Under the pieces are notes generated by a model that made no database searches, was not told the DNA's origin, and was given only the letters and a program-made list of their open reading frames with translations. A DNA stretch of 64,000 bases, taken from the IMG/VR virus record IMGVR_UViG_3300024259_002152, positions 62,001 through 126,000 of that record. One strand, given 5' to 3'. A program made the position numbers and the translations under genes. Every line of letters starts with the position of its first letter. Position 1 is the first letter of the stretch. Shown here piece after piece: positions 31,503-54,505 of the stretch.

Positions 31503-32594
31503 ATGAAACTAGGAATATTTTGTAATTTTTCATATAAGCATGTTGGTGGCTCTGAAAATGTTATTAAGAACATATCGGACAGATTAGTCAACGATTTTGA
31601 TTATGAGGTAAATGTTTATAGTTTCAGCGTTAATGCTCCTTTTTACGAGAATAAGGTTAGATATTTTCCTTGTAAAAAGGGAGATGGACTGTTTGCTCAG
31701 ATTGCTCAAAACGACCATATCTTTATTTATAGTGATTCTTTTTGGCAGCTCGATACATTACTCCAAAATATCGATAAAATCGATTGTAGGGCATCCTTGG
31801 CACTCGTAGGTGCTTACCATTTACAATCTCATCCTGAATCTTTTAGATTATTAAAAGAGAATATAGAGAAATTTAATCTTATTACCCATTCTGAGACAAC
31901 TCCTGACTATAAGTGGTGTATTGACAATAACTTACCTGTTAAAGTGGTGCCCAACGGGGTTGATTTGTCTGAATTTTGGGAAAATAGAGTAAATTTTCGT
32001 GAAAAGTATAAAATAAAAGAAAAATATATTATTCTTAGCGTTTTTTCATATTTTTTTGGCAAAGGGTTTGAAATTCTTCCCAAAATAGCTGAAAAACTAT
32101 CAGAGCATTTAGATGATTTTTTAATTCTACAATGCTCAAACACCTCCCAGTACCCCTATGATAAACCATTTTTTGAGAGGACAAAAAAACAAAGTAGAGG
32201 ACTACCTATAAGGTTTTTAAGGGATATTCCTAGGGAAGATATTGTTTCGGCTTTTAATTGTTCTGATGTGTTTTTATCGCCAAGTAAGAAAGAAGTTGCT
32301 CCTATTGTTATTCTAGAATGTAGAGCGGCGAAATTGCCTTATGTTTCTTTTGCTGTGGGGAATGTTGGAGAACAAGGAGGAATTCCTTTGATAGTCCAAC
32401 AAAAGGATAATAAGGGTTATGCTATAGTTGAGAAGAGAGATATTGATCATTTTTCTGCTGCTATACTTCAACTATTGACCTGTAAAGATGAGAGATATAA
32501 AAATATAGTAATAGAAAAAGGACAACACTTTATAAACAACATTGATTGGGACAATATAGTTCTTTTGTATGATAGAGAATTTAGACATGAATAA
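31503..32594 (+). CDS. Glycosyltransferase family 4 (GT-B)
   Basis: GGSENV, VVPNGVDL, SDVFLSPSKKEVAPIVILECRAAKLPYV. Confidence 0.9.
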   Translation: MKLGIFCNFSYKHVGGSENVIKNISDRLVNDFDYEVNVYSFSVNAPFYENKVRYFPCKKGDGLFAQIAQNDHIFIYSDSFWQLDTLLQNIDKIDCRASLALVGAYHLQSHPESFRLLKENIEKFNLITHSETTPDYKWCIDNNLPVKVVPNGVDLSEFWENRVNFREKYKIKEKYIILSVFSYFFGKGFEILPKIAEKLSEHLDDFLILQCSNTSQYPYDKPFFERTKKQSRGLPIRFLRDIPREDIVSAFNCSDVFLSPSKKEVAPIVILECRAAKLPYVSFAVGNVGEQGGIPLIVQQKDNKGYAIVEKRDIDHFSAAILQLLTCKDERYKNIVIEKGQHFINNIDWDNIVLLYDREFRHE

Positions 32595-32901
32595 ATTAAT
32601 AGGAACTACTGTATTTTATTGGCATGATGCTAAAAAGGAAATGCCAAAGTATGATAGGCCAGTTCTCTTAAAAAGAGAGCCACGTGATAAAGGCAATCCA
32701 ACAAGAGAGAATTTTATTAGTGCATGTCGGAAAATAGATTGGTCCGACGGGCAGGATTATTGGGATTATGTTGGGAAGGTATTTGAAGAATATGAGTTTA
32801 ATGTTGTTGGTTGGGCATATCTGGCAGAAATGGTATCTAATGATATATCAGAGAATAAGACAAGTGAAATAAATGATAGATTTGAGATATTAGATTTATA
32901 G
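32569..32901 (+). CDS. DUF551-like small phage protein with C-terminal RFEILDL tag (start probably ATG 32587)
   Basis: WHDAKKEMP...VVGWAYL pattern; ends INDRFEILDL*. Confidence 0.65.
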   Translation: MIENLDMNKLIGTTVFYWHDAKKEMPKYDRPVLLKREPRDKGNPTRENFISACRKIDWSDGQDYWDYVGKVFEEYEFNVVGWAYLAEMVSNDISENKTSEINDRFEILDL

Positions 32902-32914
32902 AAAAGGAGAAAAA

Positions 32915-33103
32915 ATGAGCAAAACATGTAAAGAATGTAAAGGTAAGGGAAAGATAAAAAAGAAAGAATGTGATACCTGTCATGGGTTTGGATGGGTAGA
33001 ATGTCGCTGTGGGTCATATTGTTGTAAAGAGTGTAATCCAGCCAGTAATGAGGAATCAACTATGTTATTTCCTGGTTGTTCGTTCGGAAAGTGTAACGAT
33101 TAG
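32915..33103 (+). CDS. Small Cys-rich (DnaJ-type CxxCxGxG) zinc-finger protein
   Basis: CKECKGKG, CDTCHGFG, additional Cys; AGGAG RBS upstream. Confidence 0.65.
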   Translation: MSKTCKECKGKGKIKKKECDTCHGFGWVECRCGSYCCKECNPASNEESTMLFPGCSFGKCND

Positions 33104-33106
33104 ATT

Positions 33107-33820
33107 ATGAGCACTCCATTAGTTAGTGTAATTACGACAGCATATAATTGTGAAAAATATATAAAAGAGTCTATAAATTCTATTATTAATCAGACTTTTA
33201 GAGACTTTGAGATTGTCGTTTATAACGATGCTTCTACGGATAAAACGTGGGACATTGTTTTTCATATGGATTTATTTTGTGATCATAATATTTTTAGAGG
33301 AGATAAAAATGTGGGTTGTGGAGAAGGGAGAAATAGGGCGATAAAACAAGCAAGAGGGAAATATATAGCGATACAGGATGCTGATGATATAAGTCTTCCA
33401 GAGAGATTGGAGAAAGAAGTCAATTTTTTAGAAGAGAATGATGATATATTTTGTGTGGGAGCATGGGCCATAAAGATAAAAGAAGATGGTAGTTTTATCG
33501 AATCTATGACATATCCTCGTTCTGCACATGAAAAAATATATGAAGATATAATAGTTAAAAAAAATAATCCTATTATTGATCCTTCTTGTATGTATAGGAG
33601 GGGATTGTTTAATGAATTAGGGGGTTATGATGGTCGATGGAAACTAGTTCCTGATTTTAATCTGTGGGCTAGAGCGGCTAAAGCAGGTTTTAAATTTTTC
33701 AATTTTCAGGAAGCATTGGTGTATTATCGTCAACATCCTAATAGTGTGACAAATAAGAGTGAAATGGCTGTCGTTAGAGAGCATTACAGGATGTGTAAAG
33801 AGGTTTTAGGGAATAAATAA
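33107..33820 (+). CDS. Glycosyltransferase family 2
   Basis: PLVSVITTAYN, YNDASTD, ARGKYIAIQDADD, DFNLWAR. Confidence 0.92.
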   Translation: MSTPLVSVITTAYNCEKYIKESINSIINQTFRDFEIVVYNDASTDKTWDIVFHMDLFCDHNIFRGDKNVGCGEGRNRAIKQARGKYIAIQDADDISLPERLEKEVNFLEENDDIFCVGAWAIKIKEDGSFIESMTYPRSAHEKIYEDIIVKKNNPIIDPSCMYRRGLFNELGGYDGRWKLVPDFNLWARAAKAGFKFFNFQEALVYYRQHPNSVTNKSEMAVVREHYRMCKEVLGNK

Positions 33821-33876
33821 AGGTTTTTGATAAGATGTATTGGAATAATATAAATGGGATACTTTGATACGGAGAT

Positions 33877-34350: not shown

Positions 34351-34358
34351 AGAATAAC

Positions 34359-35414: not shown

Positions 35415-35420
35415 ATACCC

Positions 35421-35449
35421 TTGAAAAGTGAAAGTAATAGAAATATTAT
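35421..35449 (+). promoter_or_regulatory. Putative promoter (copy 3)
   Basis: TTGAAAAGTGAAA at 35421, 17-nt spacer, TATTAT at 35444-49; ATG at 35456. Confidence 0.65.
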
Positions 35450-35487
35450 TGTAGAATGTTTGGTTGTTAATTATCGAGGTAGATAAA

Positions 35488-35950: not shown

Positions 35951-35969
35951 GAGAGTAGGAGTTTGCAAT

Positions 35970-38981: not shown

Positions 38982-38983
38982 TG

Positions 38984-39043: not shown

Positions 39044-40702
39044 ATGAAACCGATTAGTAAAAAAGTGAGCGAAGCGACATTAGACGAGATGTGTACGAAA
39101 AAATTTAAGGATGATTTTACAAATATTTTACGTTGTCGTTATCCTTTATTTTATATCACTCACAATGAGGAAAAAAGATTAACACAATTTTTGACTCACT
39201 TTTGTAAGGTCAAAGGTTATGAATGCTTTTTATGGGATAGCTATAATGGGCTTGTAAATTTGTTTAGTGGAGAAGAGGTGGCAGGTACTACTGAGGATCT
39301 GAAAAATAATCCTCTGGCTATTCTCGATCATGTTATTGGGGAAGGTAGAACTTTTGAGAAAAAGAAAACAAGTGTTCTAGAGAAGAAGGAGAAGGGTTGT
39401 AATGGGATAATTTATGTCCTGTTGGACTTTTTTAATTTTATCCAAGCAAATCCAGATATTGAAAGACGTTTTGTAGCATTGTCTAATTTGAATTCTATTG
39501 TTAGTACTGTTTGTACAGGTCCGTATTATCAGTCCACCGATGTGATTCAAAACATTTTACCGATGATTGAGTTTCCTTTTGCTAACAAAAAAGAAATTCG
39601 TCATGCTTTATATGATGTGGTTCATGGTGCTGAAAGAAAGATTCCTACTATTGCTAAAGAGACTAAGGCAATGGAAGAAGAACTGATTAGTGCTGTTTCT
39701 GGTTTGACTCTTATGGAGGCACAAACGGCATTTAGTAAATCTCTTGTGTCGCGCCATACTTGGGACACAGATCTCATTTTAGAGGAAAAGAAACAGATTA
39801 TCAGTAAAAGTGGCATGTTGGAGTATTTTGATAAAACTGTTTCGATGGAAGATATCGGAGGATTAAAGAATTTAACCACATGGATAAAAGAGAGAAAAAA
39901 ATGTTTTTCACAAGAGGCAGAAGATTATGGGATAAAGAAGCCTAGGGGTCTGTTGACTATTGGTATGCCTGGGTGCGGGAAGTCTTTAGTATGTAAAGCC
40001 ATTAGTAGTGTATGGAAAATGCCTTTATTAAGGTTGGACTTTGGTAAGCTTTTTGGGAATCTTGTTGGTGATTCTGAGAAGAATGCTCGGGAAGCCATTA
40101 AACAGGCCGAAGCAATTGCTCCCTCGATTTTGTGGATAGATGAAATTGAGAAAGCTATTTCTGGAGTTAATTCTAGTGGTCGCTCAGATGGAGGAACTAC
40201 AAGTCGAGTGTTGTCCACTTTCCTAACATGGATGCAGGAAAAAACCTCTCCTGTATTTGTGGTTGCTACTGCTAATAATCATGATGCGATACCTCCTGAA
40301 TTTTTGAGAGCAGGTCGTTTTGACGAGATCTTTTTTGTTGATTTGCCGAATATAGATGAGAGAGAAGAGATTTTTAATGTTCTTCTCAGACTTAGGGAAA
40401 TTAACACCAAAAAGATTAACATACCTTTATTGGCAGAAAAAAGTTCTGGGTATAGTGGTGCCGAGATTGAAAAAGGGATCGATAATGCTATGCTAGTCGG
40501 CTTTAGCGATTCAGCTAGGCCAATTGATAGTGACGACATTGTTACTGCTCTTGGTCAATTTAAATCTTTGTTTGAAATGAGACAAGCAGATTTTGAAGAG
40601 CTTAGAGAATGGGCAACAAATAAATGTCGTATGGCAAACGATGAACCTAAGAGAATCGTTAATCTAGGACAAGATAATTCTGCTAAAGATTTGGATTTAT
40701 GA
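39044..40702 (+). CDS. Ycf46-like AAA+ ATPase (degenerate N-terminal AAA domain plus intact C-terminal AAA domain)
   Basis: GMPGCGKS, ILWIDEIEK, ATANN...PPEFLRAGRFDEIFFVDLP; ends KDLDL*. Confidence 0.88.
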   Translation: MKPISKKVSEATLDEMCTKKFKDDFTNILRCRYPLFYITHNEEKRLTQFLTHFCKVKGYECFLWDSYNGLVNLFSGEEVAGTTEDLKNNPLAILDHVIGEGRTFEKKKTSVLEKKEKGCNGIIYVLLDFFNFIQANPDIERRFVALSNLNSIVSTVCTGPYYQSTDVIQNILPMIEFPFANKKEIRHALYDVVHGAERKIPTIAKETKAMEEELISAVSGLTLMEAQTAFSKSLVSRHTWDTDLILEEKKQIISKSGMLEYFDKTVSMEDIGGLKNLTTWIKERKKCFSQEAEDYGIKKPRGLLTIGMPGCGKSLVCKAISSVWKMPLLRLDFGKLFGNLVGDSEKNAREAIKQAEAIAPSILWIDEIEKAISGVNSSGRSDGGTTSRVLSTFLTWMQEKTSPVFVVATANNHDAIPPEFLRAGRFDEIFFVDLPNIDEREEIFNVLLRLREINTKKINIPLLAEKSSGYSGAEIEKGIDNAMLVGFSDSARPIDSDDIVTALGQFKSLFEMRQADFEELREWATNKCRMANDEPKRIVNLGQDNSAKDLDL

Positions 40703-43772: not shown

Positions 43773-44195
43773 ATGGATAATGAGTTTATAATTAATTTTA
43801 CAGATATAACTCTTAATGAAACTGATGGAATTTTTGAAGATACAAAGAAGATAATGCTAAATGAAACTCCCCGTAGTGATAAGTGGGTATTGAGAAGTTT
43901 TATTACTATTGTTAGCAATAGTGGTGAAGGGTCAATGGAAATTCAATGTCATGGAGATAAGAATATATATATACTAGATTATGAGCCATCGATAGGAGAT
44001 TTATATTATAATCCTGATATACAGGCGATATCTATGTGGGCTCAAGAAAATGGATGGAATATTCCTCAACCTCATCCTGATTTAATTAAATCAAATAAAG
44101 AATTTTGGAAGTATTTTTACGATACGCTTGTGATAGATTCGGATTATCTCGATAAATTATATGGAGGTAGGCCTCAAATAGATGGGAGCAAATAA
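43773..44195 (+). CDS. Hypothetical protein
   Basis: 140 aa ORF, coupled to neighbours. Confidence 0.6.
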   Translation: MDNEFIINFTDITLNETDGIFEDTKKIMLNETPRSDKWVLRSFITIVSNSGEGSMEIQCHGDKNIYILDYEPSIGDLYYNPDIQAISMWAQENGWNIPQPHPDLIKSNKEFWKYFYDTLVIDSDYLDKLYGGRPQIDGSK

Positions 44196-44422
44196 TGAAT
44201 GCAGAAATAGCAATAGAAAAAGGGTATAAATATTTTTGCTTAAATTGTAATAGACCTTATAAAGAAATTCCTACTCAATGGGAAGAAAAGAATAATTGTT
44301 TAGGCGCAGAGATAGATATGTGTAGTTGTGGTTGTGATTTATTTATGTCTTTTGAAGAGTATTTAAAAAAGCAACAAGACGAAGGTCCAATAGAAAGCAG
44401 AATGGATATTTTGGATTTATAA
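44195..44422 (+). CDS. Small zinc-ribbon protein with C-terminal tag (IESRMDILDL)
   Basis: CLNC...CSCGC; tag at 44399-44422. Confidence 0.7.
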   Translation: MNAEIAIEKGYKYFCLNCNRPYKEIPTQWEEKNNCLGAEIDMCSCGCDLFMSFEEYLKKQQDEGPIESRMDILDL

Positions 44423-46197: not shown

Positions 46198-46412
46198 TGG
46201 AATATAAATGTCAAACAGTTGATATGTCTCGTATGATCGTGGGTTCAATGGGCTTTTTTAGTCCTATTTGTGAAAGTTGTTCTACTCAAGATTGTAGCAA
46301 TCCTATCGAAAAAACAAAAGTTAGTATTATGGGGGTTGTAAAAGAAGTAAAGGTCTATAGTAGAGGTAGTCAATCTAGATTTGTTGTTCAATGTGAAGGA
46401 TATATGCCATAA
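46197..46412 (+). CDS. Small Cys-containing hypothetical protein
   Basis: CESC..DC motif; TAATG coupling. Confidence 0.6.
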   Translation: MEYKCQTVDMSRMIVGSMGFFSPICESCSTQDCSNPIEKTKVSIMGVVKEVKVYSRGSQSRFVVQCEGYMP

Positions 46413-47203
46413 TGTTTAAATCGATTTGTTTGTCAGAAGCTTATTTAAAAGATCATAGACTTCGTAAAGACGCTCAAAAGCAATATGAATTAACTCAGAA
46501 AAATATTCATAAAATCAAGCAAATTGCTCTTAAGATGATATCTTATCCTGAGTACCAATTGGCTTATGATTATGTTGATAATTTATTTCCCAGAGTTAAA
46601 GTAAAAGAAATTTCTATTTATAAGGTTGCAGCAAAAGATTTGGCAAAGATGGGATATTCTGGAGCAGAGGGATTTTATGATCCTGTGTCTAAGATAATTG
46701 TAGCTTGCGGTGCTCGCAAATTATCTCAACCTGTTAATAAGAAATATTATATAACAGCCAAGATAGAGAGAGATGAAGTTATTGTTCATGAATTATGTCA
46801 TTACTGTTATGTCTTTGAGGGGAAAAGATCTCTTAGTAGTGAAATCAGAGAAGAATTTGCTTATGGTTGGTCAGTTGGGTATCTCAGACAAAAAGGTTAT
46901 AGTGATGAGCAAATTGTTAGATATAATTTCTTACCGTATTTGGTGGGGTTGTCGTATGACGAGGCTATAAAAAATATATTAGTGAGAAATAATATAAGCA
47001 CTTATGCATATAATAATCATTCTCGATATCAAAGAAAAGAATTTGAGAGAACATATTTTGGTAGAATTTTTGATAGAGCTAAAGAAATAGCTATGGAGAG
47101 AGGATTGAAGTTGATTGATATTTATTCCAAAAAAATAGAAGAAGGGACAGGGTTAATAGACGAAGAAGTCGATTGTGATCGATTTGATATTTTAGATTTA
47201 TGA
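46412..47203 (+). CDS. HExxH (zincin-like) metallopeptidase with C-terminal tag (DRFDILDL)
   Basis: GAEGFYDP...VIVHELCHY...EEFAY. Confidence 0.7.
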   Translation: MFKSICLSEAYLKDHRLRKDAQKQYELTQKNIHKIKQIALKMISYPEYQLAYDYVDNLFPRVKVKEISIYKVAAKDLAKMGYSGAEGFYDPVSKIIVACGARKLSQPVNKKYYITAKIERDEVIVHELCHYCYVFEGKRSLSSEIREEFAYGWSVGYLRQKGYSDEQIVRYNFLPYLVGLSYDEAIKNILVRNNISTYAYNNHSRYQRKEFERTYFGRIFDRAKEIAMERGLKLIDIYSKKIEEGTGLIDEEVDCDRFDILDL

Positions 47204-47445
47204 AGAAACAAGTTATTGATAAAGATGATAGGATGTGGATAGGACTAGGTTTTAAGTCCTTTGCCCGATTTTTTGGTTTAAGTATCGAAGAAGCTTATAA
47301 AATCATTTCTAATCCTAATGAGGTTTTTGAAGAAATGATAGAAGAAATGGATTCTTCATTAAATGAATATGAAAATTTCATGGTTAAGACAATGAGAATG
47401 GATGAGAAAGAAGAACTGACTCGGCTTGATATTTTAGATTTATAG
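47200..47445 (+). CDS. Hypothetical protein with C-terminal tag (TRLDILDL)
   Basis: 81 aa; ATGA overlap with the upstream tag. Confidence 0.7.
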   Translation: MKKQVIDKDDRMWIGLGFKSFARFFGLSIEEAYKIISNPNEVFEEMIEEMDSSLNEYENFMVKTMRMDEKEELTRLDILDL

Positions 47446-47456
47446 GGGAAAACAAT

Positions 47457-47717
47457 ATGCCAATTTATGAGTACGAACACCCTGAGACAGGGGAGATATT
47501 TAGAGAAATAAGAAAAGTGAAAGAGAGAGATAATCCTTTTATATCTAAAGATGGAAAGATATGTAAAAGGATAACATTTCCTGGGGGAATAAAAGGTTGG
47601 AAGAAGAATAGGGAAGTTTTCGAAGCTGATCCTGCGTATGTTAAGCAGTCCAACCCCAAGTTCGTTCAATTCCAAGACGGTCATAAAGAGAGATATGACT
47701 CTACAAAACACTGTTGA
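47457..47717 (+). CDS. FmdB-family zinc-ribbon-like protein lacking most of the Cys ligands
   Basis: MPIYEYEHPETGEIF resembles MPIYEYxCxxCG of FmdB proteins. Confidence 0.65.
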   Translation: MPIYEYEHPETGEIFREIRKVKERDNPFISKDGKICKRITFPGGIKGWKKNREVFEADPAYVKQSNPKFVQFQDGHKERYDSTKHC

Positions 47718-47748
47718 AAAGTGAAAGATAAAAAGACATAATAGATGG
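47714..47748 (+). promoter_or_regulatory. Putative promoter (copy 5), ATG at predicted +1
   Basis: TTGAAAAGTGAAA at 47714, 17-nt spacer, CATAAT at 47737-42, ATG at 47749. Confidence 0.7.
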
Positions 47749-48108
47749 ATGAGATTTATACGTAAAGAGTTTATAGTTACTACTATATTTAATAAAGAAT
47801 TAACAGAGAGGGACGAAGTCCTAATCGTTTTTAACAATTTATTAAATGAGAGGATAGAGTTCGCTATGACTATGAAGAAGTATATGCCTATGCAACAAGA
47901 CTATTTCAATATGAGTTTTGAAAAAGTTAGGGTGAAGAGAATCAACGATGATGATACTGTTGATTTGTTAGCTTTCAAGAGTGGGGTTAAAACTAACATA
48001 AAGGGGGTTCCTTTTGATCATATCATAGAAGTAAATGCGACTACTAAAAAACATAAAATTTTAGATATTGACTCCGATTTAAATCGTTTTGATATATTAG
48101 ACTTGTAA
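47749..48108 (+). CDS. Hypothetical protein with C-terminal tag (NRFDILDL)
   Basis: 119 aa. Confidence 0.7.
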   Translation: MRFIRKEFIVTTIFNKELTERDEVLIVFNNLLNERIEFAMTMKKYMPMQQDYFNMSFEKVRVKRINDDDTVDLLAFKSGVKTNIKGVPFDHIIEVNATTKKHKILDIDSDLNRFDILDL

Positions 48109-48815
48109 TGACAGAAGAAGTAAAAAAAGAAGTAAAAGAATTAATAGATCAATATAAATTAGATTGTTCTATTGAAGAGTTTAAAAACAAAGCAAATTGG
48201 GAAAAAATTTCTCATTATGACTTCCTTTCAGAAGATTTTATTAGAGAATTTCAAGATGAAGTACATTGGGAATATCTTTGTTTTTATCAACTATTGCCAG
48301 AAGACTTTATTAGAGAATTTAAAGACGAGGTACATTGGGATAATGTTTTTATATGTCAAAAAATATCAGAGAATTTTATTAGAGAATTTAAGGATAAAGC
48401 AAGTTGGAGAGAAATTTCTTATTATCAAGAATTATCAGAGAATTTTATTAGAGAATTTAAAGATGAAGTAAATTGGAACAATATTTGTCAGAAACAAAAG
48501 TTATCAGAGAATTTTATTAGAGAATTTCAGGATAGGGTAAATTGGCATTGGACTCCCTTTTATCAAACCTTATCAGAAGATTTTATTAGAGAGTTTCAAG
48601 ATAAAGTAGATTGGGTGGCTGTATCTTTTTGTCAAGTATTATCAGAAGATTTTATCAGGGATTTTAGAGACAAGATTTCTTTAGGGTATTTATCGAGTAA
48701 TCAAAAAATAAATGTCTCAGAAGAATTTCGAAAAGGAATAAAAAATGGAAAAATATTACCTCCTCCAATAAAACCATTTTCTTTTGGTAATAGAGTAGAA
48801 ATGTTGGACTTATAA
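48108..48815 (+). CDS. 23-aa tryptophan-repeat protein (7 repeats) with C-terminal tag (NRVEMLDL)
   Basis: W-x6-Q-x-LSE[D/N]FIREF-x-D-x-V-x repeated; tag at 48792-48815. Confidence 0.85.
   Translation: MTEEVKKEVKELIDQYKLDCSIEEFKNKANWEKISHYDFLSEDFIREFQDEVHWEYLCFYQLLPEDFIREFKDEVHWDNVFICQKISENFIREFKDKASWREISYYQELSENFIREFKDEVNWNNICQKQKLSENFIREFQDRVNWHWTPFYQTLSEDFIREFQDKVDWVAVSFCQVLSEDFIRDFRDKISLGYLSSNQKINVSEEFRKGIKNGKILPPPIKPFSFGNRVEMLDL
48198..48680 (+). repeat. Seven imperfect 69-bp tandem repeats (core TCAGA[A/G][G/A]ATTTTATTAGAGAATTT)
   Basis: Visible in DNA and in protein; first Trp codon at 48198. Confidence 0.85.
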
Positions 48816-49162
48816 TGTATAGAGTTGTAGTATTAAAAGAGAAAGATAATAGTTGTTCAGGTTGTTTTGGAAAATCACTTGGATTCTGCTCGAGTTATCA
48901 GTGCCTTACAGGAAATACCTCTTCTGATAGGTCCACTACTGCTTGTATTAATAAAAACAAAGATATTAATAGATATGTCCAGGGTTTTTTGAGATCAAAA
49001 GCACAAGTCCTAAATGACTATAATAGCACAGAAGAAGTTATTAATTCGTTCATAAGATATCTAGAAAATATTGGTAGTACAGATGATGATGCTATTATTG
49101 TAGAAGAAAAGGAAGAAAAAGAAGAAATTATTGAAGACAGATTCGAAATGTTGGATTTGTAA
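48815..49162 (+). CDS. Cys-cluster hypothetical protein with C-terminal tag (IEDRFEMLDL)
   Basis: CSGC...C...C...C; 115 aa. Confidence 0.7.
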   Translation: MYRVVVLKEKDNSCSGCFGKSLGFCSSYQCLTGNTSSDRSTTACINKNKDINRYVQGFLRSKAQVLNDYNSTEEVINSFIRYLENIGSTDDDAIIVEEKEEKEEIIEDRFEMLDL

Positions 49163-49650
49163 TGACAGAAAAAGTAAAAAAAGAAGTAGAAGAAATAATA
49201 AAAGAATATAAATCACAAGTTTCTGTTAGTTATATTCGGGCATTTGAAGATCAGAAATTTGAAAGTCAGGCATTTTGGCAGTCTATTTCTCAATTCCAAA
49301 TTTTATCAGAAGATTTTATTAGAGAATTTCAAGATAAAGTATGGTGGTATGCTATTTCTTGGCATCAAAAATTATTAGAAGATTTTATTAGGGAATTTAA
49401 AGATGAAATAAATTGGTATCAAATTTTTTTACATCAAAAATTATCAGAAGGTTTTATTAGGGAGATTACTGAGAACTTGAAAGACGACAAGAAGTTTTAT
49501 TATGAAGAAAATTTAAGATGTTTACTTAGAAACAAAAATATACCAAATCAAATAAGAAAAGAGATAAATAATTATGGAAAAATATTACCTCCTCGTGGTC
49601 CAATAAAATTATTTTCTTTTAGTGATAGAGCAGAAATGTTGGACTTATGA
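49162..49650 (+). CDS. Tryptophan-repeat protein paralog (3 repeats) with tag (DRAEMLDL)
   Basis: Shares N-terminus MTExVKKEV and C-terminal GKILPP...FSF with 48108. Confidence 0.8.
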   Translation: MTEKVKKEVEEIIKEYKSQVSVSYIRAFEDQKFESQAFWQSISQFQILSEDFIREFQDKVWWYAISWHQKLLEDFIREFKDEINWYQIFLHQKLSEGFIREITENLKDDKKFYYEENLRCLLRNKNIPNQIRKEINNYGKILPPRGPIKLFSFSDRAEMLDL

Positions 49651-50165
49651 CAGAAGAATTAAAAAAAGAAATAGAAGAAATAATAAGAATTGAGAATCTT
49701 AGTTGTTCTGTAGAAGAATTTATTATAGAGGCAAATGATCCTATTTATAGAATTCCCATAGAAGAAGTTCCTTCTATGGAGGGGAAGAAAAGGGTGTGTA
49801 TAAAAACTACTCTGTGGAGTAGAATTTGTCAACATTGTAGTTTATCAGAAGATTTGATGAGAGAATTTATTGAATTACTTCATTGGCCTGGTGTATCTTG
49901 TCATCAAAAATTATCAATAGAATTTGTTAGAGAGTTTAAACACAAAATTCATTGGTATTGGCATACTCATAGAACAGATTTGTCTTATGATTTTATTTTA
50001 GAATTTGAAAAATATTTAGATTGGGAATATTTGATGAAAAAGAAATATTATATATCTGATAATCAAGGTTTTTTTAATGGTGATTTAGATTTTTCTTTAG
50101 AAGAATATAAAAGATTTAAAGAAGAAAATAAAATTCATAGTAGATTTGGTATTTTGGACTTATGA
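49647..50165 (+). CDS. Divergent tryptophan-repeat protein (3 repeats) with tag (SRFGILDL)
   Basis: WSRICQHCSLSEDLMREF, WPGVSCHQKLSIEFVREF, WYWHTHRTDLSYDFILEF. Confidence 0.75.
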   Translation: MTEELKKEIEEIIRIENLSCSVEEFIIEANDPIYRIPIEEVPSMEGKKRVCIKTTLWSRICQHCSLSEDLMREFIELLHWPGVSCHQKLSIEFVREFKHKIHWYWHTHRTDLSYDFILEFEKYLDWEYLMKKKYYISDNQGFFNGDLDFSLEEYKRFKEENKIHSRFGILDL

Positions 50166-50189
50166 AGAAATGGTTGAAGGAAAGAGGTT

Positions 50190-51605
50190 ATGAAATACAA
50201 TAATAAAGATTTTGTTCACTTTCACACACATTCGGAATTTAGTCAGTTTGACGGTTTGGCCAAGGTAGATGATCTTGTTCTTCAAGCTCGAAAGATGGGA
50301 TTTCCATCATTAGCACTTACGGACCATGGATCGGTTATGGGCTGGGTTAAATTTCTCCAGGCAGCAAGAGCTACTAAGGACAAAAAAGGGAAAGATATTC
50401 CTTACGCTCCTATTAAACCTATCCTTGGTTGTGAATTTTATCTGGCTCGAAAAATGAGTATAGGTCAAAATGAGGAGAAAAGAGATACTGATCTTATAAA
50501 AAAATGGCAGCCCGATGGGAGAAGAGGAAATAGACATTTGAATCTCTATGCTATGAATTTTGAAGGATATAAGAATGTATGTCGTATGTCCCAAAGGTCT
50601 TTTACCGAGGGTTTTTATTATGATGCACGTATCGATATTGATTTAATATCAAAACACTCTAAAGGAGTAATGTGTGGTTCAGCATGTCTATCTAGCGTTA
50701 TTAACGCTAATTTAATGTATGGTCGTTACAACCAAGCTAAACAGGTTTGTGGTGTTTTGAATGAGATATTTGATGGTAATTTTTTTCTAGAAATAATGTA
50801 TCATGGGATTAGGGAAGAAAGAGAAATTATTCCTTTAATCTTAAAATTATCATCAGAATTAGATATTCCTGTAGTTGCTACGAATGATTCTCACTACATT
50901 TATAAGGATCAAGGAGAATCTCAAGAAGTCCTATTGTGTATGTCTCAGCAAAGATGTGTTAAAGATCCAAAGAGATTAAAATTTGGTCATATGGAGTTCT
51001 ATCTAAAAAGTGCAGAAGAAATGGGCAGGATGTTTGGGCATATCCCTCATAGTTTGACTAATTCTGTTGCTCTTGCGGAGAGAATTAATACTAAAGATAT
51101 AGAAGATAACCTTTTTGGGGGCATGAGACTGCCAAAGTTCGATATACCTGAAAAGTATAAAAGTCCTTATGATTATTTATCTGATTTAGCATGGCAAGGC
51201 ATGAAAAGAATAGGTTGGGATCAGAGTAAAGAGCATGTTGAAGCACTAAAAAAAGAGTTAGAAGATGTTCTGGTCGCTCAAGAAAATAATAATTATGATT
51301 TCTCAACTTATTTTCTAATTGTTCGTGATTACATTCTTGACGCAAAGGAAAAGGGTGTTTTGGTGGGTTGCGGTAGAGGGAGTGGTTATGCTAGTGTGCT
51401 ATTAAGATGTATTGAAATTACTTATGGAGTTGATCCATTAAAATATGGACTTCTTTGGGAAAGGTTTTTAGGATTTGATTCTAAGAAGTTTATTAAAGAG
51501 TCAGATTTCGGCTTTGAAGAAGATTTGGTGCAGGCGGCGGCAGATAAAGATTTAGGAGGAGATAGAGAGTTAGAAGATGATTTGGGAGGGGTAGATAGAT
51601 ATTAA
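50190..51605 (+). CDS. dnaE: DNA polymerase III alpha, N-terminal fragment (PHP domain to ERFL)
   Basis: FVHFHTHSEFSQFDG, LTDHG, PILGCEFY, ATNDSHY, YFLIVRDYI, VGCGRGS, DPLKYGLLWERFL, then an acidic tail and stop. Confidence 0.93.
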   Translation: MKYNNKDFVHFHTHSEFSQFDGLAKVDDLVLQARKMGFPSLALTDHGSVMGWVKFLQAARATKDKKGKDIPYAPIKPILGCEFYLARKMSIGQNEEKRDTDLIKKWQPDGRRGNRHLNLYAMNFEGYKNVCRMSQRSFTEGFYYDARIDIDLISKHSKGVMCGSACLSSVINANLMYGRYNQAKQVCGVLNEIFDGNFFLEIMYHGIREEREIIPLILKLSSELDIPVVATNDSHYIYKDQGESQEVLLCMSQQRCVKDPKRLKFGHMEFYLKSAEEMGRMFGHIPHSLTNSVALAERINTKDIEDNLFGGMRLPKFDIPEKYKSPYDYLSDLAWQGMKRIGWDQSKEHVEALKKELEDVLVAQENNNYDFSTYFLIVRDYILDAKEKGVLVGCGRGSGYASVLLRCIEITYGVDPLKYGLLWERFLGFDSKKFIKESDFGFEEDLVQAAADKDLGGDRELEDDLGGVDRY

Positions 51606-51619
51606 AGATTGGAAAAATA

Positions 51620-51880
51620 ATGACAGACAAAAAAGAAAAATTTAATATAGGGTGGGGAGACAGACGGGTAGGAGTTATTGGAAAAGATGGAGAAATGATA
51701 GGCAATTTTGTTGTTTTTGACCCCAAAACAAGAATGTTGAAATCTGTTGATGAAAAAGGAGAAGTAGTAAATTTAATTATGGATGCCGATTGTAGGACAT
51801 GGATTCCAGAAGAAATAGAGAAAAAAGAAACAGAAGAGGATATAGGGATAGAGAATCGTTCAGATATTTTGGATATTTGA
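51620..51880 (+). CDS. Hypothetical protein with tag (IENRSDILDI)
   Basis: 86 aa. Confidence 0.7.
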   Translation: MTDKKEKFNIGWGDRRVGVIGKDGEMIGNFVVFDPKTRMLKSVDEKGEVVNLIMDADCRTWIPEEIEKKETEEDIGIENRSDILDI

Positions 51881-51997
51881 AGAAAGTAGATAGATATTAG
51901 TGCAGAGAAGAAAGAGATAATATATCTAAACTTTAGTAATGAATGTTCTATTTGGAAGATTAGTTCTATCATTAACAAAAGGGATGTGAAACATTTT

Positions 51998-52153
51998 ATG
52001 ATAGATGATAATAAATGTTTTGTTATAGGGTGTCTTGGTGTTAATGAAGAAGCATATGTAGGAGAATATGTGTTTTTCAGAGATTTTAATCATTGTCTGA
52101 GGTTTAAAAAAATAGAAGCAATTCATGATAGATTTGAGATAATGGACTTATAG
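51998..52153 (+). CDS. Small ORF missed by the track, with tag (MIDDNKCF...IHDRFEIMDL); frame is open back to 51890
   Basis: Hand translation: 51 aa from ATG 51998; no stop between 51890 and TAG 52151-53. Confidence 0.65.
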   Translation: MIDDNKCFVIGCLGVNEEAYVGEYVFFRDFNHCLRFKKIEAIHDRFEIMDL

Positions 52154-52162
52154 GAGAAAAAA

Positions 52163-52687
52163 ATGAAGAGATCGTGTCATATTTGCAAACATGGTGTTAT
52201 AGTTGAATATAAATATGAAGATGATTATGACGAGGACTATATTTTTAAAGGATCGGTTATATTTTGTATTGCAAATCCTCCTCTTTTTGTAGGGGATGAT
52301 GATCATCGTTTTGGGAATGATCTTCAGATCGTAGAAGGAGAAAAGGAGATAAAGGAATATTGTTATTATCCTGTTGTTTATAGAAATGATAATGAGAATA
52401 TAGAAGAAGATGATGAAGATGATGAATATTATGGTAATGGAGAGATAAGTGTTGCTCCTTGTTCTCTTTATTGTGAATCGGCCACTAATAAAACTAAATA
52501 TACGAAGAAATTGGAGAAAATAGAAAAAGAAAAGCAAGAGCAAATAAAAAAAGCAGAAACTAAGAAGAAAGCAGAAGCCAAGAAAAAAGCCGATAAGTTA
52601 CAACGTAAAAAAAATAATAAAAAACGGAAACTAAAAGAGCAAGAAGAAATGAAATTAAAAAACAGATTTGAAATATTGGATATATGA
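52163..52687 (+). CDS. Cys-containing protein with Lys-rich coiled coil and tag (NRFEILDI)
   Basis: CHIC..., KKAE repeats; AGGAG RBS overlaps the preceding stop. Confidence 0.7.
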   Translation: MKRSCHICKHGVIVEYKYEDDYDEDYIFKGSVIFCIANPPLFVGDDDHRFGNDLQIVEGEKEIKEYCYYPVVYRNDNENIEEDDEDDEYYGNGEISVAPCSLYCESATNKTKYTKKLEKIEKEKQEQIKKAETKKKAEAKKKADKLQRKKNNKKRKLKEQEEMKLKNRFEILDI

Positions 52688-53010
52688 AATACAAAGTAGG
52701 AGATAAAGTAAGGATTAAGATATGGGAAGACATGTTAATAGAGTTGTGTAATTATTGGGAGACTCTAGAACAGGCAAGAAACCGTCTTGAGGATCAACAT
52801 ATCTGTCTTGAAAAGGAACTTAACAAGGTAAATGTTGATAGGATTTTGACTATTGAAAGTATAGAAAAACGTGAAGGTTATTATTGTTATCGTACAAAGG
52901 AGAAAGGTTGGGAATGGACTGAGGATATGATAGAAGGGATAGTAGAAGACGTGATAGAGGACCGAATTGAGGATAGAATAGAAAGTAGATTTGAGATATT
53001 GGATATATGA
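52684..53010 (+). CDS. KOW/SH3-like small protein with tag (IEDRIEDRIESRFEILDI)
   Basis: Paralog of 30506 and 53671. Confidence 0.75.
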   Translation: MKYKVGDKVRIKIWEDMLIELCNYWETLEQARNRLEDQHICLEKELNKVNVDRILTIESIEKREGYYCYRTKEKGWEWTEDMIEGIVEDVIEDRIEDRIESRFEILDI

Positions 53011-53402
53011 AATTTATAGAAGTAATAGATTATAATAAGTCATATCCTCAAGGTATTTTTGTAAAAATTCCTATCAAAGATATAAAGAAATTTCATAAGG
53101 TTGAAAAATATACTAGATATTATATAGATTTAGATGATTCAGAACGTTTGTTAAAACGTAAGTATAAAGAACACCTTGGTAATCACATGTTTATCGAGAA
53201 ATCTGAAAATGGTCAATATTATAGTGCTGGGATTATGATTAATCATAAAACACAGATACAATGCCAATCGTCATGTGGTGGTAGTATATATTTTTATTTT
53301 TCAGATTTGGATTATGAAGAATTTGAGGGAGAAGCTCGGTTGTATGATTTGTCGTTACATATTGCCGATATTAATTATAGATTTGAGATATTGGATATAT
53401 AA
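53007..53402 (+). CDS. Hypothetical protein with tag (DINYRFEILDI)
   Basis: 131 aa; ATGA overlap. Confidence 0.7.
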   Translation: MKFIEVIDYNKSYPQGIFVKIPIKDIKKFHKVEKYTRYYIDLDDSERLLKRKYKEHLGNHMFIEKSENGQYYSAGIMINHKTQIQCQSSCGGSIYFYFSDLDYEEFEGEARLYDLSLHIADINYRFEILDI

Positions 53403-53404
53403 AA

Positions 53405-53671
53405 GTGACAGATAAAGAATTTTTACAGATGGTGAGAAATTCATTTGCTCAGGTTCGTAATAAGGGTAATTTGCCTACTGGTCCTGAGCTAATTGAATCA
53501 TTATTATCAGTTCAACCTATGACTGATGAATTAGTTGCAGAGGGATATACTAATGAATTAATAAAATTAGGAAGTTCTAATTTGCAGCGTAAAAAAGTTA
53601 TTATTACAGCATATATGGATATTAATTATAGATTTGAAATATTGGATATACAAAAACAGGAGATAAAGTAA
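53405..53671 (+). CDS. Hypothetical protein; tag extended by QKQEIK
   Basis: GTG start; ...RFEILDI then CAA where sister copies have TAA/TGA/TAG. Confidence 0.65.
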   Translation: MTDKEFLQMVRNSFAQVRNKGNLPTGPELIESLLSVQPMTDELVAEGYTNELIKLGSSNLQRKKVIITAYMDINYRFEILDIQKQEIK

Positions 53672-53940
53672 TGAAATATAAAACAGGAGATAAAGTAAGG
53701 ATAAAGACAAAGGGTCAGATGGAGAAAGAATTTGGCTATTATGACGAAGAAAGCAAATTCATAAATTGTGATCAACATTTTTCTTCTATTATGGAAGAGG
53801 CACTGAATCGGCTAGATAGTGATAGAATTCTTACTATTAATCATTTAGAATATTTTCAAAATGTTAATTATTATTACATGAGGGAAATAGAGGGATTTTG
53901 GACTGATGATATGATAGATGAGTTAGTAAATGATAAATAG
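53671..53940 (+). CDS. KOW/SH3-like small protein; tag lies just downstream in the +1 frame (possible frameshift)
   Basis: MKYKTGDKVRIK...; 53930-53962 reads MINRFEILDI* in the +1 frame. Confidence 0.7.
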   Translation: MKYKTGDKVRIKTKGQMEKEFGYYDEESKFINCDQHFSSIMEEALNRLDSDRILTINHLEYFQNVNYYYMREIEGFWTDDMIDELVNDK

Positions 53941-53971
53941 ATTTGAGATATTGGATATATAGGAATAAAAG

Positions 53972-54505
53972 ATGAGTGAAGTAAGTAAATTATCAGAAGA
54001 AGATCTTAAAAAAATAGCGGATATGATGGTTGATCAGGCAGTAGTGCCGTCTCCTAAAGCAATTATTAAAATAGAAAATGAGACTGTTCCTGAAACTGAT
54101 ACAATTAAAAGATATAAAAGGTCTAATAAACAATTACGGACAAAAGTAGAAAGACAGATTAGCGAAATAGCCAAACAGGAAGCAGAGATAAAAGAGTTGC
54201 AGGTAAGTGCTTATCTTAATACGGATGAGGCTAAAGATACGATCAATAAAAAATTAAGAGAAGAAAAACAAGCATTAAAGCTAAAAATGGAAGAGCAGGG
54301 ATTAAATTTTGAAAAAGAGCGCAAAGAAATAATAGAGACAAGAAGTAAGATTTATGAGTTAGAACGAACAATAGGGAGTAATAAGAAAGAGATTGAGGGG
54401 CTAAGAACAGAAGTGGATCAATTAATGAATGATAATAGAGAACTTCAAGCAGAGATAGATGCTAGAATTAAAGCAGATGGTAGATTTAATATAATGGATT
54501 TATAA
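53972..54505 (+). CDS. Coiled-coil protein with tag (GRFNIMDL)
   Basis: 177 aa, heptad-rich. Confidence 0.75.
   Translation: MSEVSKLSEEDLKKIADMMVDQAVVPSPKAIIKIENETVPETDTIKRYKRSNKQLRTKVERQISEIAKQEAEIKELQVSAYLNTDEAKDTINKKLREEKQALKLKMEEQGLNFEKERKEIIETRSKIYELERTIGSNKKEIEGLRTEVDQLMNDNRELQAEIDARIKADGRFNIMDL

What the first reader, a model, noticed from the sequence alone, without database searches (positions are those of the whole stretch)
32569..54505. A shared C-terminal tag (I-x-x-R-F-E-I-L-D-L/I-COOH) on 17 mostly unrelated small phage proteins: candidate new targeting/docking system
Seen in sequence: proteins with different bodies (DUF551-like, Zn ribbons, zincin protease, Trp-repeat proteins, KOW-like, coiled coil) end in the same motif. 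The ends are INDRFEILDL, IESRMDILDL, CDRFDILDL, LTRLDILDL, LNRFDILDL, GNRVEMLDL, IEDRFEMLDL, SDRAEMLDL, IHSRFGILDL, IENRSDILDI, IHDRFEIMDL, KNRFEILDI, IESRFEILDI, INYRFEILDI (x2, one read-through), INRFEILDI (out of frame) and DGRFNIMDL. Fifteen of the 17 ORFs between 46412 and 54505 carry it, counting the two imperfect copies; the structural and core replication genes do not. Arg is encoded by AGA, CGA, CGG and CGT, Asp by GAT/GAC and Leu by TTA/TTG, so selection acts on the peptide, and it nearly always sits flush with the stop. Established knowledge: free C-terminal peptides act as addresses (ssrA degrons, SSB tails, HbYX motifs, encapsulin cargo peptides). Inference: this is a universal address that routes a set of accessory effectors to one partner, for example virion packaging/ejection, a phage AAA+ unfoldase or a host hub. 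I do not recognise it as a named system.
Basis: partly seen in the sequence, partly recalled or inferred. Interest (0 to 1): 0.95.

Follow-up and report, generated by a model that had tools for sequence, protein, structure and literature searches.

The report
Shared C-terminal address tail in huge phages
Dozens of small, unrelated proteins of a 351-kb phage and its relatives all end in the same 7-11-residue tail (…P-I-x-N-R-F-E-I-L-D-L), which behaves like a transferable address label for one still unidentified partner and has not been described before as far as I could find.

Summary
R-x-[EDGN]-[IM]-[LM]-D-[LI] occurs 17 times in the six-frame translation, all on the + strand. Fifteen copies lie exactly at an ORF end, against 0.1 expected. 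Two copies are decayed: one stop loss, one +1 frameshift.

The window belongs to a 351-kb huge phage. In the pieces I fetched from three such phages (298-548 kb), 119 ORFs in 71 unrelated families carry P-I-x-[NSD]-R-F-[ED]-I-L-D-[LI]-COOH. That is 39% of ORFs up to 200 aa and 3% of larger ones.

More distant relatives with the same replication module keep the tail in genome-specific dialects (RWQILDL, RFELMDL, FDVLDLD). A zincin-like protein keeps it in 101 of 102 homologues, down to 35% identity. AlphaFold puts the tail on a disordered linker.

It is therefore a peptide-level, modular docking tail that changes in step within each genome. The partner is not identified. My ranking:
- p97/Cdc48-like AAA ATPase of the same module: about 0.3
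- clamp-type replisome hub: 0.2
- capsid loading: 0.15
- host hub or protease: 0.15

The closest precedents are the T4 clamp-binding epitopes, the T4 capsid-targeting sequence, and HslU/HbYX tails. None fits fully.

The parts
32569..32901 (+). tagged ORF, 110 aa, ends INDRFEILDL (tail 32878-32898)
   Evidence: no Pfam hit
44195..44422 (+). tagged ORF, 75 aa, Cys-rich, ends IESRMDILDL (tail 44399-44419); orthologue in the 298-kb phage ends IENRLDILDL
46412..47203 (+). tagged zincin-like protein, 263 aa, invariant HELCH, ends CDRFDILDL (tail 47180-47200); conserved across the whole clade with the tail
47200..47445 (+). tagged ORF, 81 aa, ends LTRLDILDL (tail 47422-47442); tagged orthologues in relatives
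47749..48108 (+). tagged ORF, 119 aa, ends LNRFDILDL (tail 48085-48105); tagged orthologues in relatives
48108..48815 (+). tagged Trp-repeat protein, 235 aa (phrog_3532), ends GNRVEMLDL (tail 48792-48812)
48815..49162 (+). tagged ORF, 115 aa, ends IEDRFEMLDL (tail 49139-49159)
49162..49650 (+). tagged Trp-repeat paralogue, 162 aa, ends SDRAEMLDL (tail 49627-49647)
49647..50165 (+). tagged Trp-repeat paralogue, 172 aa, ends IHSRFGILDL (tail 50142-50162)
51620..51880 (+). tagged ORF, 86 aa, ends IENRSDILDI (tail 51857-51877); first ORF between the two DnaE halves
51986..52153 (+). tagged ORF, 55 aa, ends IHDRFEIMDL (tail 52130-52150)
52163..52687 (+). tagged ORF, 174 aa, ends KNRFEILDI (tail 52664-52684)
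52684..53010 (+). tagged ORF, 108 aa, ends IESRFEILDI (tail 52987-53007)
53007..53402 (+). tagged ORF, 131 aa, ends INYRFEILDI (tail 53379-53399)
53405..53671 (+). ORF, 88 aa, with the tail at 53630-53650 followed by CAA instead of a stop; reads on QKQEIK (stop-loss copy)
53671..53962 (+). ORF 53671-53940 (89 aa, paralogue of 52684) plus an orphan tail in the +1 frame (mini-ORF 53930-53962, MINRFEILDI); one extra A in an A-run separates body and tail
53972..54505 (+). tagged ORF, 177 aa, Lys/Glu-rich and probably helical, ends DGRFNIMDL (tail 54482-54502)
39044..40702 (+). p97/Cdc48-like type II AAA ATPase (degenerate D1, active D2, no N domain) with its own flexible tail KDLDL (40685-40699); candidate partner or co-client
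50190..51605 (+). DnaE N-terminal fragment (PHP domain), untagged; together with 54542-56515 it brackets one array of tagged ORFs
54542..56515 (+). DnaE C-terminal fragment, ends ETIDIFG: a different, beta-clamp-motif-like tail

Best explanation
SHOWN. The tail is a short linear docking or recognition peptide. Its core is R-F-[ED]-I-L-D-[LI] at the C-terminus. It is usually preceded by P-I-x-[NSD] and joined to the body by a flexible, polar linker. It is selected as a peptide. It is attached to at least 71 unrelated families of mostly small proteins. Its sequence changes in step across all tagged proteins of a genome.

INFERRED, about 0.8. All tagged proteins of a phage are read by one shared partner. 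The hydrophobic face (I-9, F-5, I-3/L-2, L0) would fit a groove. Arg-6, and the negative charge after the last hydrophobic residue (the alpha-carboxylate, or an added Asp/Glu), would be read by charged groups.

COMMITTED GUESS, about 0.3. The partner is the phage's own p97/Cdc48-like AAA ATPase (39044-40702). It is conserved in the same module in every tag-bearing genome seen. It would use the exposed tail plus disordered linker as a recognition and initiation tag, much as ClpX uses ssrA. This would engage the accessory proteins as a class for unfolding, removal or remodelling, for example clearing early accessory proteins at a set time. The tagged zincin-like protein could be its proteolytic partner. 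Replication enzymes and virion proteins, which lack the tail, would be spared.
For: Peptide-level selection:
- Arg, Phe, Ile and Asp codons in 119 tails follow background usage, and all three stop codons are used.
- All 95 of 95 ORFs that end in hyd-hyd-D-hyd have Arg at -6.

Modularity:
- 117 bodies fall into 71 BLAST families.
- Trp-repeat relatives in phage G lack the tail.

Class bias: 107 of 271 ORFs up to 200 aa are tagged, against 3 of 103 larger ones.

Shared partner, from genome-specific dialects:
- L196: R-W-[QN]-I-L-D-L in 6 of 7 tails.
- L197: R-F-E-L-M-D-L.
- L200: F-[DE]-V-[LI]-D-L-D without Arg.
- The vertically inherited zincin orthologue follows each dialect.

Conservation: 101 of 102 zincin homologues keep a tail down to 35% identity.

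Flexible presentation:
- In the AF2 model of the zincin (pLDDT 84.8), linker 245-256 and tail have low pLDDT, about 40-50.
- The linker is enriched in polar and disorder-promoting residues.

AAA candidate:
- Sequence and fold match p97/Cdc48 D1-D2: phmmer 3e-55, and Foldseek 7e-22 over about 580 columns.
- It is present in the same syntenic module in W351, B298, C548, L196, L197, L200 and L201.

Negative charge after the motif: extensions are mostly Asp or Glu.
Against: - No binding was tested or modelled. No multimer prediction was available.
- The AAA family extends to many huge phages at about 35% identity, whose neighbourhoods show no such tails. The AAA is therefore not specific to tagged genomes.
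- The AAA lacks the N domain that p97 uses for motif-bearing cofactors.
- The AAA carries a tail of the same style, [KR]-x-[LI]-[DE]-[LIF]-COOH. In three of the four lineages where tail and tags could be compared beyond the common form, the departures parallel those of the tags; L184 does not follow (AAA ...QLDI, tag ...LMEI). That fits the AAA being another client of a third protein at least as well as it fits the AAA being the receptor.
- No peptidase ring or clamp was found in the roughly 40% of the genome I could read.
- The near-absence of CTN Leu codons in the tail shows some nucleotide-level constraint that this model does not explain.
Confidence: 0.35

Rival explanations
1. Replisome hub docking. 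The tail works like the T4-family sliding-clamp-binding epitope. It tethers accessory proteins to a sliding clamp, or another ring-shaped replisome hub, on replicating phage DNA. The clamp would act as a tool-belt for more than 100 clients.
For: - RB69 DNA polymerase ends ...SLFDMFDF and gp55 ends ...SLDFLYEDDN.
- The polymerase tail fits the class pattern of the tag at six positions: aromatic-acidic-hyd-hyd-D-hyd-COOH. It is nearly identical to the dialect ...TLFDVLDFD of distant zincin homologues.
[quoted passage not shown] All of these features are seen here.
- The conserved tagged genes (zincin, 81-aa, 119-aa) and two arrays lie inside the replication module and between the DnaE halves.
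Against: - The phage's own polymerase fragment ends in a different tail: ETIDIFG here, and SCDMFAGTF, GADIFG and SVDMFNFI in relatives. This looks like the canonical beta-clamp motif. In T4 all clamp clients share one motif.
- No helicase, primase, SSB or RecA carries the tag.
- No clamp gene (gp45-like or DnaN-like) was detected by phmmer or hhalign in the held sequence.
- Tagged bodies show none of the usual clamp clients.
Confidence: 0.2
2. Capsid or ejection cargo signal. The tail loads accessory proteins into the huge procapsid, for delivery with the DNA. It would do this by binding the scaffold, the inner shell surface or the portal. The analogues are the T4 capsid-targeting sequence and encapsulin cargo-loading peptides.
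For: - The tagged set is small, fast-evolving, mostly ORFan and arrayed, like the T4 internal-protein loci.
- Neighbours include counter-defence-like genes: an Apyc1-like protein, NADAR and a LAGLIDADG endonuclease.
- Structural proteins themselves are untagged.
- A tagged protease travelling with tagged cargo would parallel the T4 prohead protease (established knowledge).
Against: - The conserved tagged genes sit in the replication module, not with head genes.
- The signal is C-terminal, with no sign of a processing site.
- The AAA ATPase has a similar tail.
- No virion data exist.
- More than 100 different cargo species per virion would be unprecedented.
Confidence: 0.15
3. Host hub or host protease signal. 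The tail is read by a host protein. Candidates are an HslV/ClpQ-type or ClpP-type peptidase ring, the ClpX or ClpC N domain, a PDZ protease, or another hub. It would act as a degron, or as a plug or activator of that machine. The dialects would reflect different hosts.
For: - E. coli HslU ends ...EDLSRFIL. By established knowledge this tail inserts into HslV pockets. The core S-R-F-(E)-I-L of the tag resembles it.
- The phage AAA tail is of the same style.
- The tail is C-terminal and hydrophobic, and a negative charge is kept after the last residue.
- The dialects differ between phages of different GC content, 25-42%.
Against: - The penultimate residue is Asp, not the Tyr of HbYX. The endings do not match the ssrA type LAA.
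- A scan of 185,579 species' genomes for the commonest coding form of the tail gave only scattered single hits consistent with chance. So there is no host protein family to mimic.
- The host is unknown.
Confidence: 0.15
4. Mainly a nucleotide-level element. The conserved 21-30 nt at gene 3' ends would serve as a recombination or cassette-capture site, or as a termination-reinitiation signal for the next gene. The peptide would be a by-product.
For: - Neighbouring tails are nearly identical in DNA (52664-53959).
- Arrays sit at insertion hot spots that split DnaE.
- Leu codons in the tail are TTR in 202 of 207 cases, against about 63% in the background. GAG is enriched.
- ATGA stop/start overlap occurs in 40% of tagged genes and 12% of untagged genes.
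Against: - Arg uses six codons at background frequencies. Phe, Ile and Asp codons are also at background.
- The stop codon varies, and substitutions are conservative at the protein level.
- The element is always in frame at an ORF end, and only on the coding strand.
- The tail is kept on an orthologue down to 35% identity while its DNA is rewritten.
- 42% of tagged genes have no overlap with the next gene.
Confidence: 0.05

Closest known systems
T4-family sliding-clamp-binding epitopes (C-terminal tails of gp43, gp55, gp33)
   Same: - A short hydrophobic and acidic tail at the extreme C-terminus of unrelated phage proteins.
- It sits on a divergent linker of variable length, is interchangeable, and tolerates being internal (PMC2988020).
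- The RB69 polymerase tail ...LFDMFDF matches the class pattern of the tag.
   Different: - T4 has three or four clients, and they include the polymerase. Here there are more than 100 clients, and the polymerase (DnaE) carries a different tail.
- The invariant Arg at -6 has no counterpart.
- No clamp was found in the sequence I could read.
T4 capsid targeting sequence on internal proteins; encapsulin cargo-loading peptides
   Same: One short terminal peptide shared by unrelated, fast-evolving small proteins, which routes them to one place. This comparison rests on established knowledge, not on a test made here.
   Different: - The T4 signal is N-terminal and is cut off by the prohead protease. 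The tail here is C-terminal, with no evidence of processing.
- The tagged genes lie in the replication module.
- No virion data exist.
C-terminal docking tails of AAA+ unfoldases and activators on peptidase rings (HslU tail, HbYX motif)
   Same: - A flexible C-terminal hydrophobic tail shared by unrelated proteins that dock into the same pockets.
- E. coli HslU ends ...EDLSRFIL, close to S-R-F-E-I-L of the tag.
- The phage's p97-like AAA has a conserved tail of the same style.
   Different: - The penultimate residue is Asp, not Tyr.
- Those tails sit on a few activators, not on about 40% of the small proteins.
- No HslV-like or proteasome-like gene was found in the held sequence.
ssrA-type C-terminal degrons read by ClpX
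   Same: A terminal peptide on a flexible segment, with a negative charge after the last hydrophobic residue, that marks many unrelated proteins for one AAA+ machine.
   Different: - It is genome-encoded, not added by tmRNA.
- The sequence is unrelated (…ILDL against …LAA).
- Extensions of up to 16 residues are tolerated in one subfamily.
p97/Cdc48 cofactor motifs and viral multigene families with a constant docking module (poxvirus ankyrin-PRANC/F-box)
   Same: Variable bodies joined to one constant short docking element that plugs them into a single hub. A p97-like ATPase is encoded in the same module.
   Different: - This is a resemblance from memory only.
- The phage ATPase lacks the N domain that binds such motifs.
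- The tail has no sequence similarity to an F-box.

Membership tests
T4-type sliding-clamp-binding epitope | Short hydrophobic-acidic segment at the extreme C-terminus | tested here: met
   The tail logo from 119 copies, compared with the RB69 gp43 and gp55 tails read from the genome.
T4-type sliding-clamp-binding epitope | Joined to the body by a divergent linker of variable length | tested here: met
   Positions upstream of -11 are not conserved and the linker is enriched in polar residues. AF2 gives a low-confidence linker at 245-256.
T4-type sliding-clamp-binding epitope | Carried by the phage's replicative DNA polymerase | tested here: not met
   DnaE C-terminal fragment ends ETIDIFG. Relatives end SCDMFAGTF, GADIFG and SVDMFNFI.
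T4-type sliding-clamp-binding epitope | A cognate sliding clamp is present and binds the tail | tested here: inconclusive
   No gp45-like or DnaN-like ORF by phmmer or hhalign in the held loci. Only about 40% of the genome was readable. Binding cannot be tested here.
T4 capsid targeting sequence | N-terminal peptide removed by the prohead protease | tested here: not met
   The motif is at the C-terminus in all copies.
T4 capsid targeting sequence / cargo-loading peptides | Tagged proteins are found inside the capsid | not testable with these tools
   No virion proteome exists; the phage is uncultured.
HbYX motif | Hydrophobic-Tyr-any residue as the last three residues | tested here: not met
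   The penultimate residue is Asp in 119 of 119 copies.
HslU-type tail / peptidase-ring docking | A partner peptidase ring is encoded | tested here: inconclusive
   No HslV-like ORF in the held sequence. The genome is only partly readable and the host is unknown.
ssrA-like C-terminal degron | Free alpha-carboxylate on the last residue of the motif is required | tested here: inconclusive
   101 of 119 copies are flush with the stop. But 18 copies, and 25 of 101 zincin homologues, have 1-16 extra residues, mostly Asp or Glu.
p97/Cdc48 cofactor docking | A p97-like type II AAA ATPase is present | tested here: met
   phmmer against PDB 3e-55. Foldseek 7e-22 over D1-D2.
p97/Cdc48 cofactor docking | N domain that binds cofactor motifs | tested here: not met
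   The N-terminal half is a degenerate AAA domain (D1), and there is no extra N domain.

The most novel reading that the evidence does not exclude
A clade of huge phages has evolved a proteome-scale, genome-encoded address system. One C-terminal peptide is pasted onto hundreds of otherwise unrelated accessory proteins and co-evolves with a single phage-encoded receptor. The receptor could be an unfoldase, a ring hub or the capsid interior. The phage could then recruit, deliver or destroy its whole accessory arsenal as one class. This would be a viral counterpart of cellular sorting signals, with lineage-specific dialects.
Probability: 0.4. Interest if true: 0.9.

Novelty: new variant of a known kind. 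Interest (0 to 1): 0.8.

Why it matters
Most genes of huge phages are small ORFans of unknown role. A tail shared by about 40% of them marks them as one functional class. It also gives a direct experimental handle: a peptide of about 11 residues can be used as bait to pull down the partner, and as a label to list the whole class in any related genome.

If the partner is an unfoldase or protease, this would be a phage-encoded global turnover switch. If it is a clamp-like hub, it would be by far the largest client set known for a viral hub. If it is the capsid, it would be a natural cargo-loading tag for very large capsids.

The genome-specific dialects offer a natural covariation experiment for finding the receptor.

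Tried and rejected
- Chance. Rejected by shuffles. The relaxed C-end regex gave 0 hits in about 600 ORFs of distant AAA loci and 1 in about 1000 ORFs of random viral loci.
- A hidden common domain. Rejected: bodies fall into 71 families. Pfam and PHROGs are almost empty for tagged proteins.
- A cellular reservoir or host protein to mimic. The genome-contig scan gave only scattered single hits, mostly out of frame or in tiny ORFs.
- Literature. Searches for the literal motif and for the concept found nothing relevant.
- Orthologues of the zincin by the search for related loci with an alignment. No result.
- PDB profile searches:
  - 351-aa and 317-aa conserved proteins and the zincin: no hit.
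  - 280-aa protein: only weak DnaC/DnaI similarity.
- Clamp hunt with RB69 gp45/gp44/gp62 and E. coli DnaN by phmmer and hhalign. Negative.
- HslV hunt. Negative.
- The 395-aa protein next to the SSB. Judged from the alignment consensus alone not to be clamp-like; no secondary-structure prediction or fold test was run, so I did not fold it.
- The AAA N-terminal region as a separate peptide-binding domain. Rejected: it is a degenerate D1. AF2 shows no docking of the AAA's own tail in cis.
- Promoter and terminator scan. Uninformative.
- DNA-pattern scans of IMG/VR for the RFELMDL and RWQILDL dialects. Only chance hits.
- Walking along the genome. One look-up failed, and one gave genes but no clamp or peptidase.

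Full report
**1. The observation**

All matches are on the + strand, at the listed coordinates.

- Fifteen matches are the last residues of a tiled ORF.
- The copy at 53630-53650 is followed by CAA and reads on for six residues.
- The copy at 53939-53959 lies in the +1 frame directly after ORF 53671-53940. One A fewer in the run before it would give ...V-N-D-N-R-F-E-I-L-D-I-stop.
- Nucleotide shuffles give 0.105 matches per window. Residue-shuffled proteins give 0.026.
- BLASTP of the bodies without their tails finds only two paralogue groups.
- Pfam finds nothing in the tagged window proteins.

**2. Context**

All genes are on the + strand, GC is about 32%, and GC skew is strongly positive.

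- Window 1-30 kb encodes giant fibre- or adhesin-like proteins.
- 30.7-33.8 kb holds glycosyltransferases.
- From 34 kb there is a replication module. In gene order it holds:
  - an SF2 helicase
  - IF3
  - a classical AAA ATPase
  - a weakly DnaC-like protein
  - DnaB
  - a primase Zn-ribbon; the primase is split, with the Toprim part 16 kb downstream
  - PRPP synthetase
  - DnaE split into 50190-51605 and 54542-56515
  - a weak gp32-like SSB
  - RecA
  - a PD-(D/E)XK nuclease
  - SpoVS
- The tagged arrays lie after a conserved 71-aa ORF (46412-50165) and between the two DnaE halves (51620-54505). Single copies lie at 32569 and 44195.

**3. Where else the tail occurs**

A DNA-pattern scan of IMG/VR shows that the window is positions 62004-126003 of a 350,866-bp contig. 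The same tail is abundant in contigs of 297,710 and 547,943 bp and in three shorter ones. Single hits elsewhere fall in tiny non-coding-frame ORFs.

In the pieces fetched I count 119 distinct tagged ORFs of at least 38 aa, median length 105 aa.

The position frequencies are:

| Position | Residues (of 119) |
|---|---|
| -10 | P 42 |
| -9 | I 89 |
| -7 | N/S/D 102 |
| -6 | R 119 |
| -5 | F 82 |
| -4 | E/D 111 |
| -3 | I 107 |
| -2 | L 108 |
| -1 | D 119 |
| 0 | L 99, I 20 |

- In a non-circular check, all 95 ORFs that merely end in hyd-hyd-D-hyd have Arg at -6.
- The 117 bodies fall into 71 BLAST families.
- 39% of ORFs up to 200 aa are tagged, against 3% of larger ones. These loci were chosen for tags, so the absolute fraction is inflated.
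- Further tagged bodies are almost all ORFans. There is one DUF4116 repeat protein, one DUF551 hit and some zinc ribbons.
- The Trp-repeat bodies belong to a gene family common in Firmicutes jumbo phages. The phage G members lack the tail.
- A scan of one genome per prokaryotic species found no cellular family with the tail.

**4. Peptide or DNA?**

Codons for Arg (six codons), Phe, Ile and Asp in the tails follow the background of the same genes. All three stop codons occur. This is peptide-level selection.

Two departures remain.

- Leu at -2 and 0 is TTA or TTG in 202 of 207 cases. The background has about 37% CTN, and the last seven codons of untagged genes have 28% CTN.
- GAG is favoured over GAA.

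Part of this follows from tight coupling to the next gene. ATGA overlap occurs in 40% of tagged genes and 12% of untagged genes, and the last sense codon ends in A in 77%. The bias at -2 is unexplained.

**5. Depth and co-variation**

The zincin-like tagged protein (46412-47203, invariant HELCH) has 106 homologues in public metagenomes, down to 35% identity. Of the 102 full-length ones, 101 keep a tail.

The tail drifts with distance:
- DRFDILDL
- then GRYGMLDL, GRWGMLDL and NRFSILDL
- then SRFELMEFDD, DRFDLMDLD, GFTFLDLDD and TLFDVLDFD

Twenty-five homologues have 1-4 extra residues, mostly Asp.

Loci around five of these homologues show the same synteny, including the split DnaE. In each genome the other tagged ORFs speak the same dialect as the orthologue:

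| Locus | Dialect |
|---|---|
| L196 | R-W-[QNG]-[IM]-L-D-L |
| L197 | R-F-[ED]-L-M-[DE]-L(-D) |
| L200 | hyd-F-[DE]-[VF]-[LI]-D-L-(E)D, without Arg |
| L201 | R-F-[ED]-L-[MF]-E-[LF]-D |
| L202 | N-R-F-E-L-M-[DE]-I |

Unrelated bodies changing in parallel with a vertically inherited orthologue is what a shared, co-evolving reader predicts. Concerted evolution by recombination between tails could contribute.

**6. Presentation of the tail**

The AF2 model of the zincin, built on 24 sequences, has pLDDT 84.8. It has a long C-terminal helix to residue 244, a low-confidence linker at 245-256, and a short low-confidence helix over the tail. Foldseek gives only weak zinc-metalloprotease matches.

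The linker region of all tagged proteins is enriched in polar and charged residues.

**7. Candidate partners**

(a) The AAA ATPase at 39044-40702.
- It matches Cdc48/p97 D2 by sequence (3e-55).
- Its AF2 model (pLDDT 86) aligns over about 580 columns with p97 D1-D2.
- Its N-terminal half is a degenerate AAA domain, and there is no N domain.
- It is present in the same place in every tag-bearing genome seen, but also at about 35% identity in many other huge phages.
- It carries its own disordered tail, [KR]-x-[LI]-[DE]-[LIF]-COOH.
- In three of the four lineages where tail and tags could be compared beyond the common form, that tail departs in parallel with the tags (L184 does not follow: AAA ...QLDI against tag ...LMEI):
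  - L200: KEIDLE against ...IDLD
  - L201: RDLEI against ...FELD and ...MEFDD
  - L197: KDLDLT against ...MDLD

(b) A sliding clamp.
- RB69 gp43 ends ...SLFDMFDF and gp55 ends ...SLDFLYEDDN.
- The T4 review describes these epitopes in terms that fit the tail here (PMC2988020).
- However, DnaE here ends in a different, beta-motif-like tail, and no clamp was found.

(c) A peptidase ring. E. coli HslU ends ...EDLSRFIL. No HslV-like gene was found.

(d) The capsid. This cannot be tested here.

**8. Verdict**

The tail is a real, abundant, peptide-level, modular and co-evolving C-terminal docking motif. It occurs in a clade of huge phages from environmental metagenomes.

- I hold at about 0.8 that it addresses the tagged proteins to one shared partner.
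- Which partner is open. I rank them as follows:
  - the p97-like AAA first, at about 0.3
  - a clamp-type replisome hub, at 0.2
  - capsid loading, at 0.15
  - a host hub or protease, at 0.15
  - a mainly nucleotide-level role, at 0.05
- It belongs to the known kind 'shared terminal docking or targeting peptide'. Its sequence, its scale and its dialects are new, and I found no description of it.

Noticed in passing
window 50190-51605 and 54542-56515: DnaE is split into a PHP/N-terminal gene and a C-terminal gene, with nine small ORFs in between. The split is conserved in all relatives examined. One relative (L200) has further splits with inteins and LAGLIDADG domains.
   Followed up: partly
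window 43148-43771 and 60188-60895: The primase is split. The CHC2 zinc-ribbon gene and the Toprim gene lie 16 kb apart.
   Followed up: no
window 39044-40702: A p97/Cdc48-like type II AAA ATPase with degenerate D1, no N domain and a conserved disordered C-terminal tail (KDLDL). The family is widespread in huge phages (39 IMG/VR loci).
   Followed up: yes
window 38472-38981; 44425-45381; 61971-62297: Phage-encoded translation initiation factor IF3, PRPP synthetase and a SpoVS homologue. The last, together with Shine-Dalgarno sites, hints at a Firmicutes-like host.
   Followed up: no
window 35970-37514, 41538-43145, 43148-43771, 54542-56515, 56745-57056, 58339-59043, 34359-35414: Nearly every replication protein has its own conserved C-terminal tail class across the clade:
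- helicase: EEFEIIGD
- DnaB: acidic plus W/F
- primase Zn: xWxI
- DnaE-C: xIDIFG
- 103-aa protein: DEFDFD or EVDIFS
- gp32-like SSB: DDWESNF
- 351-aa protein: LLSSDRVW

This suggests a replisome wired by tail docking.
   Followed up: partly
window tails, e.g. 47180-47203, 52664-52687: Leu codons inside the tail are almost exclusively TTA or TTG. ATGA stop/start overlaps are 3-4 times more frequent after tagged genes than after untagged ones.
   Followed up: partly
window 53630-53671 and 53930-53962: Two decaying copies of the tail lie in adjacent paralogues. One has a stop codon changed to CAA. The other has a one-base insertion in an A-run, which leaves a 10-codon orphan ORF that encodes only the tail. 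Sequencing error or programmed frameshift is not excluded.
   Followed up: partly
window 6498-30427: Four giant ORFs (2221, 1967, 2075 and 1047 aa) and a 652-aa ORF carry Laminin_G_3, fn3, FG-GAP and Kelch domains. They are probably host-binding fibres or adhesins.
   Followed up: no
L157:12156-12947 (548-kb phage), protein P0038: The same protein is labelled in NCBI as from a 'Candidatus Asgardarchaeia archaeon' MAG. Other homologues are labelled Paceibacterota or Clostridia. This is probably phage DNA binned into MAGs.
   Followed up: no
L028:9465-11161 (same phage genome, 142.8-144.5 kb): A LAGLIDADG endonuclease and a metallo-beta-lactamase-fold protein matching the anti-Pycsar Apyc1 family lie next to tagged ORFs. 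Further downstream are NADAR, NeuB and CTP-transferase, peptide deformylase and radical SAM genes.
   Followed up: no
window 40837-40869: A 14-bp-stem hairpin followed by a T-rich tract lies inside the DnaC-like gene directly downstream of the AAA gene.
   Followed up: no
L006 and L030 (548-kb phage, 138-159 kb): Tandem arrays of 120-175-aa paralogues carry a tail variant, x-I-x-N-R-[SA]-E-[IL]-L-D-L, followed by 1-16 extra residues that usually start with Gly, Glu or Ser.
   Followed up: partly
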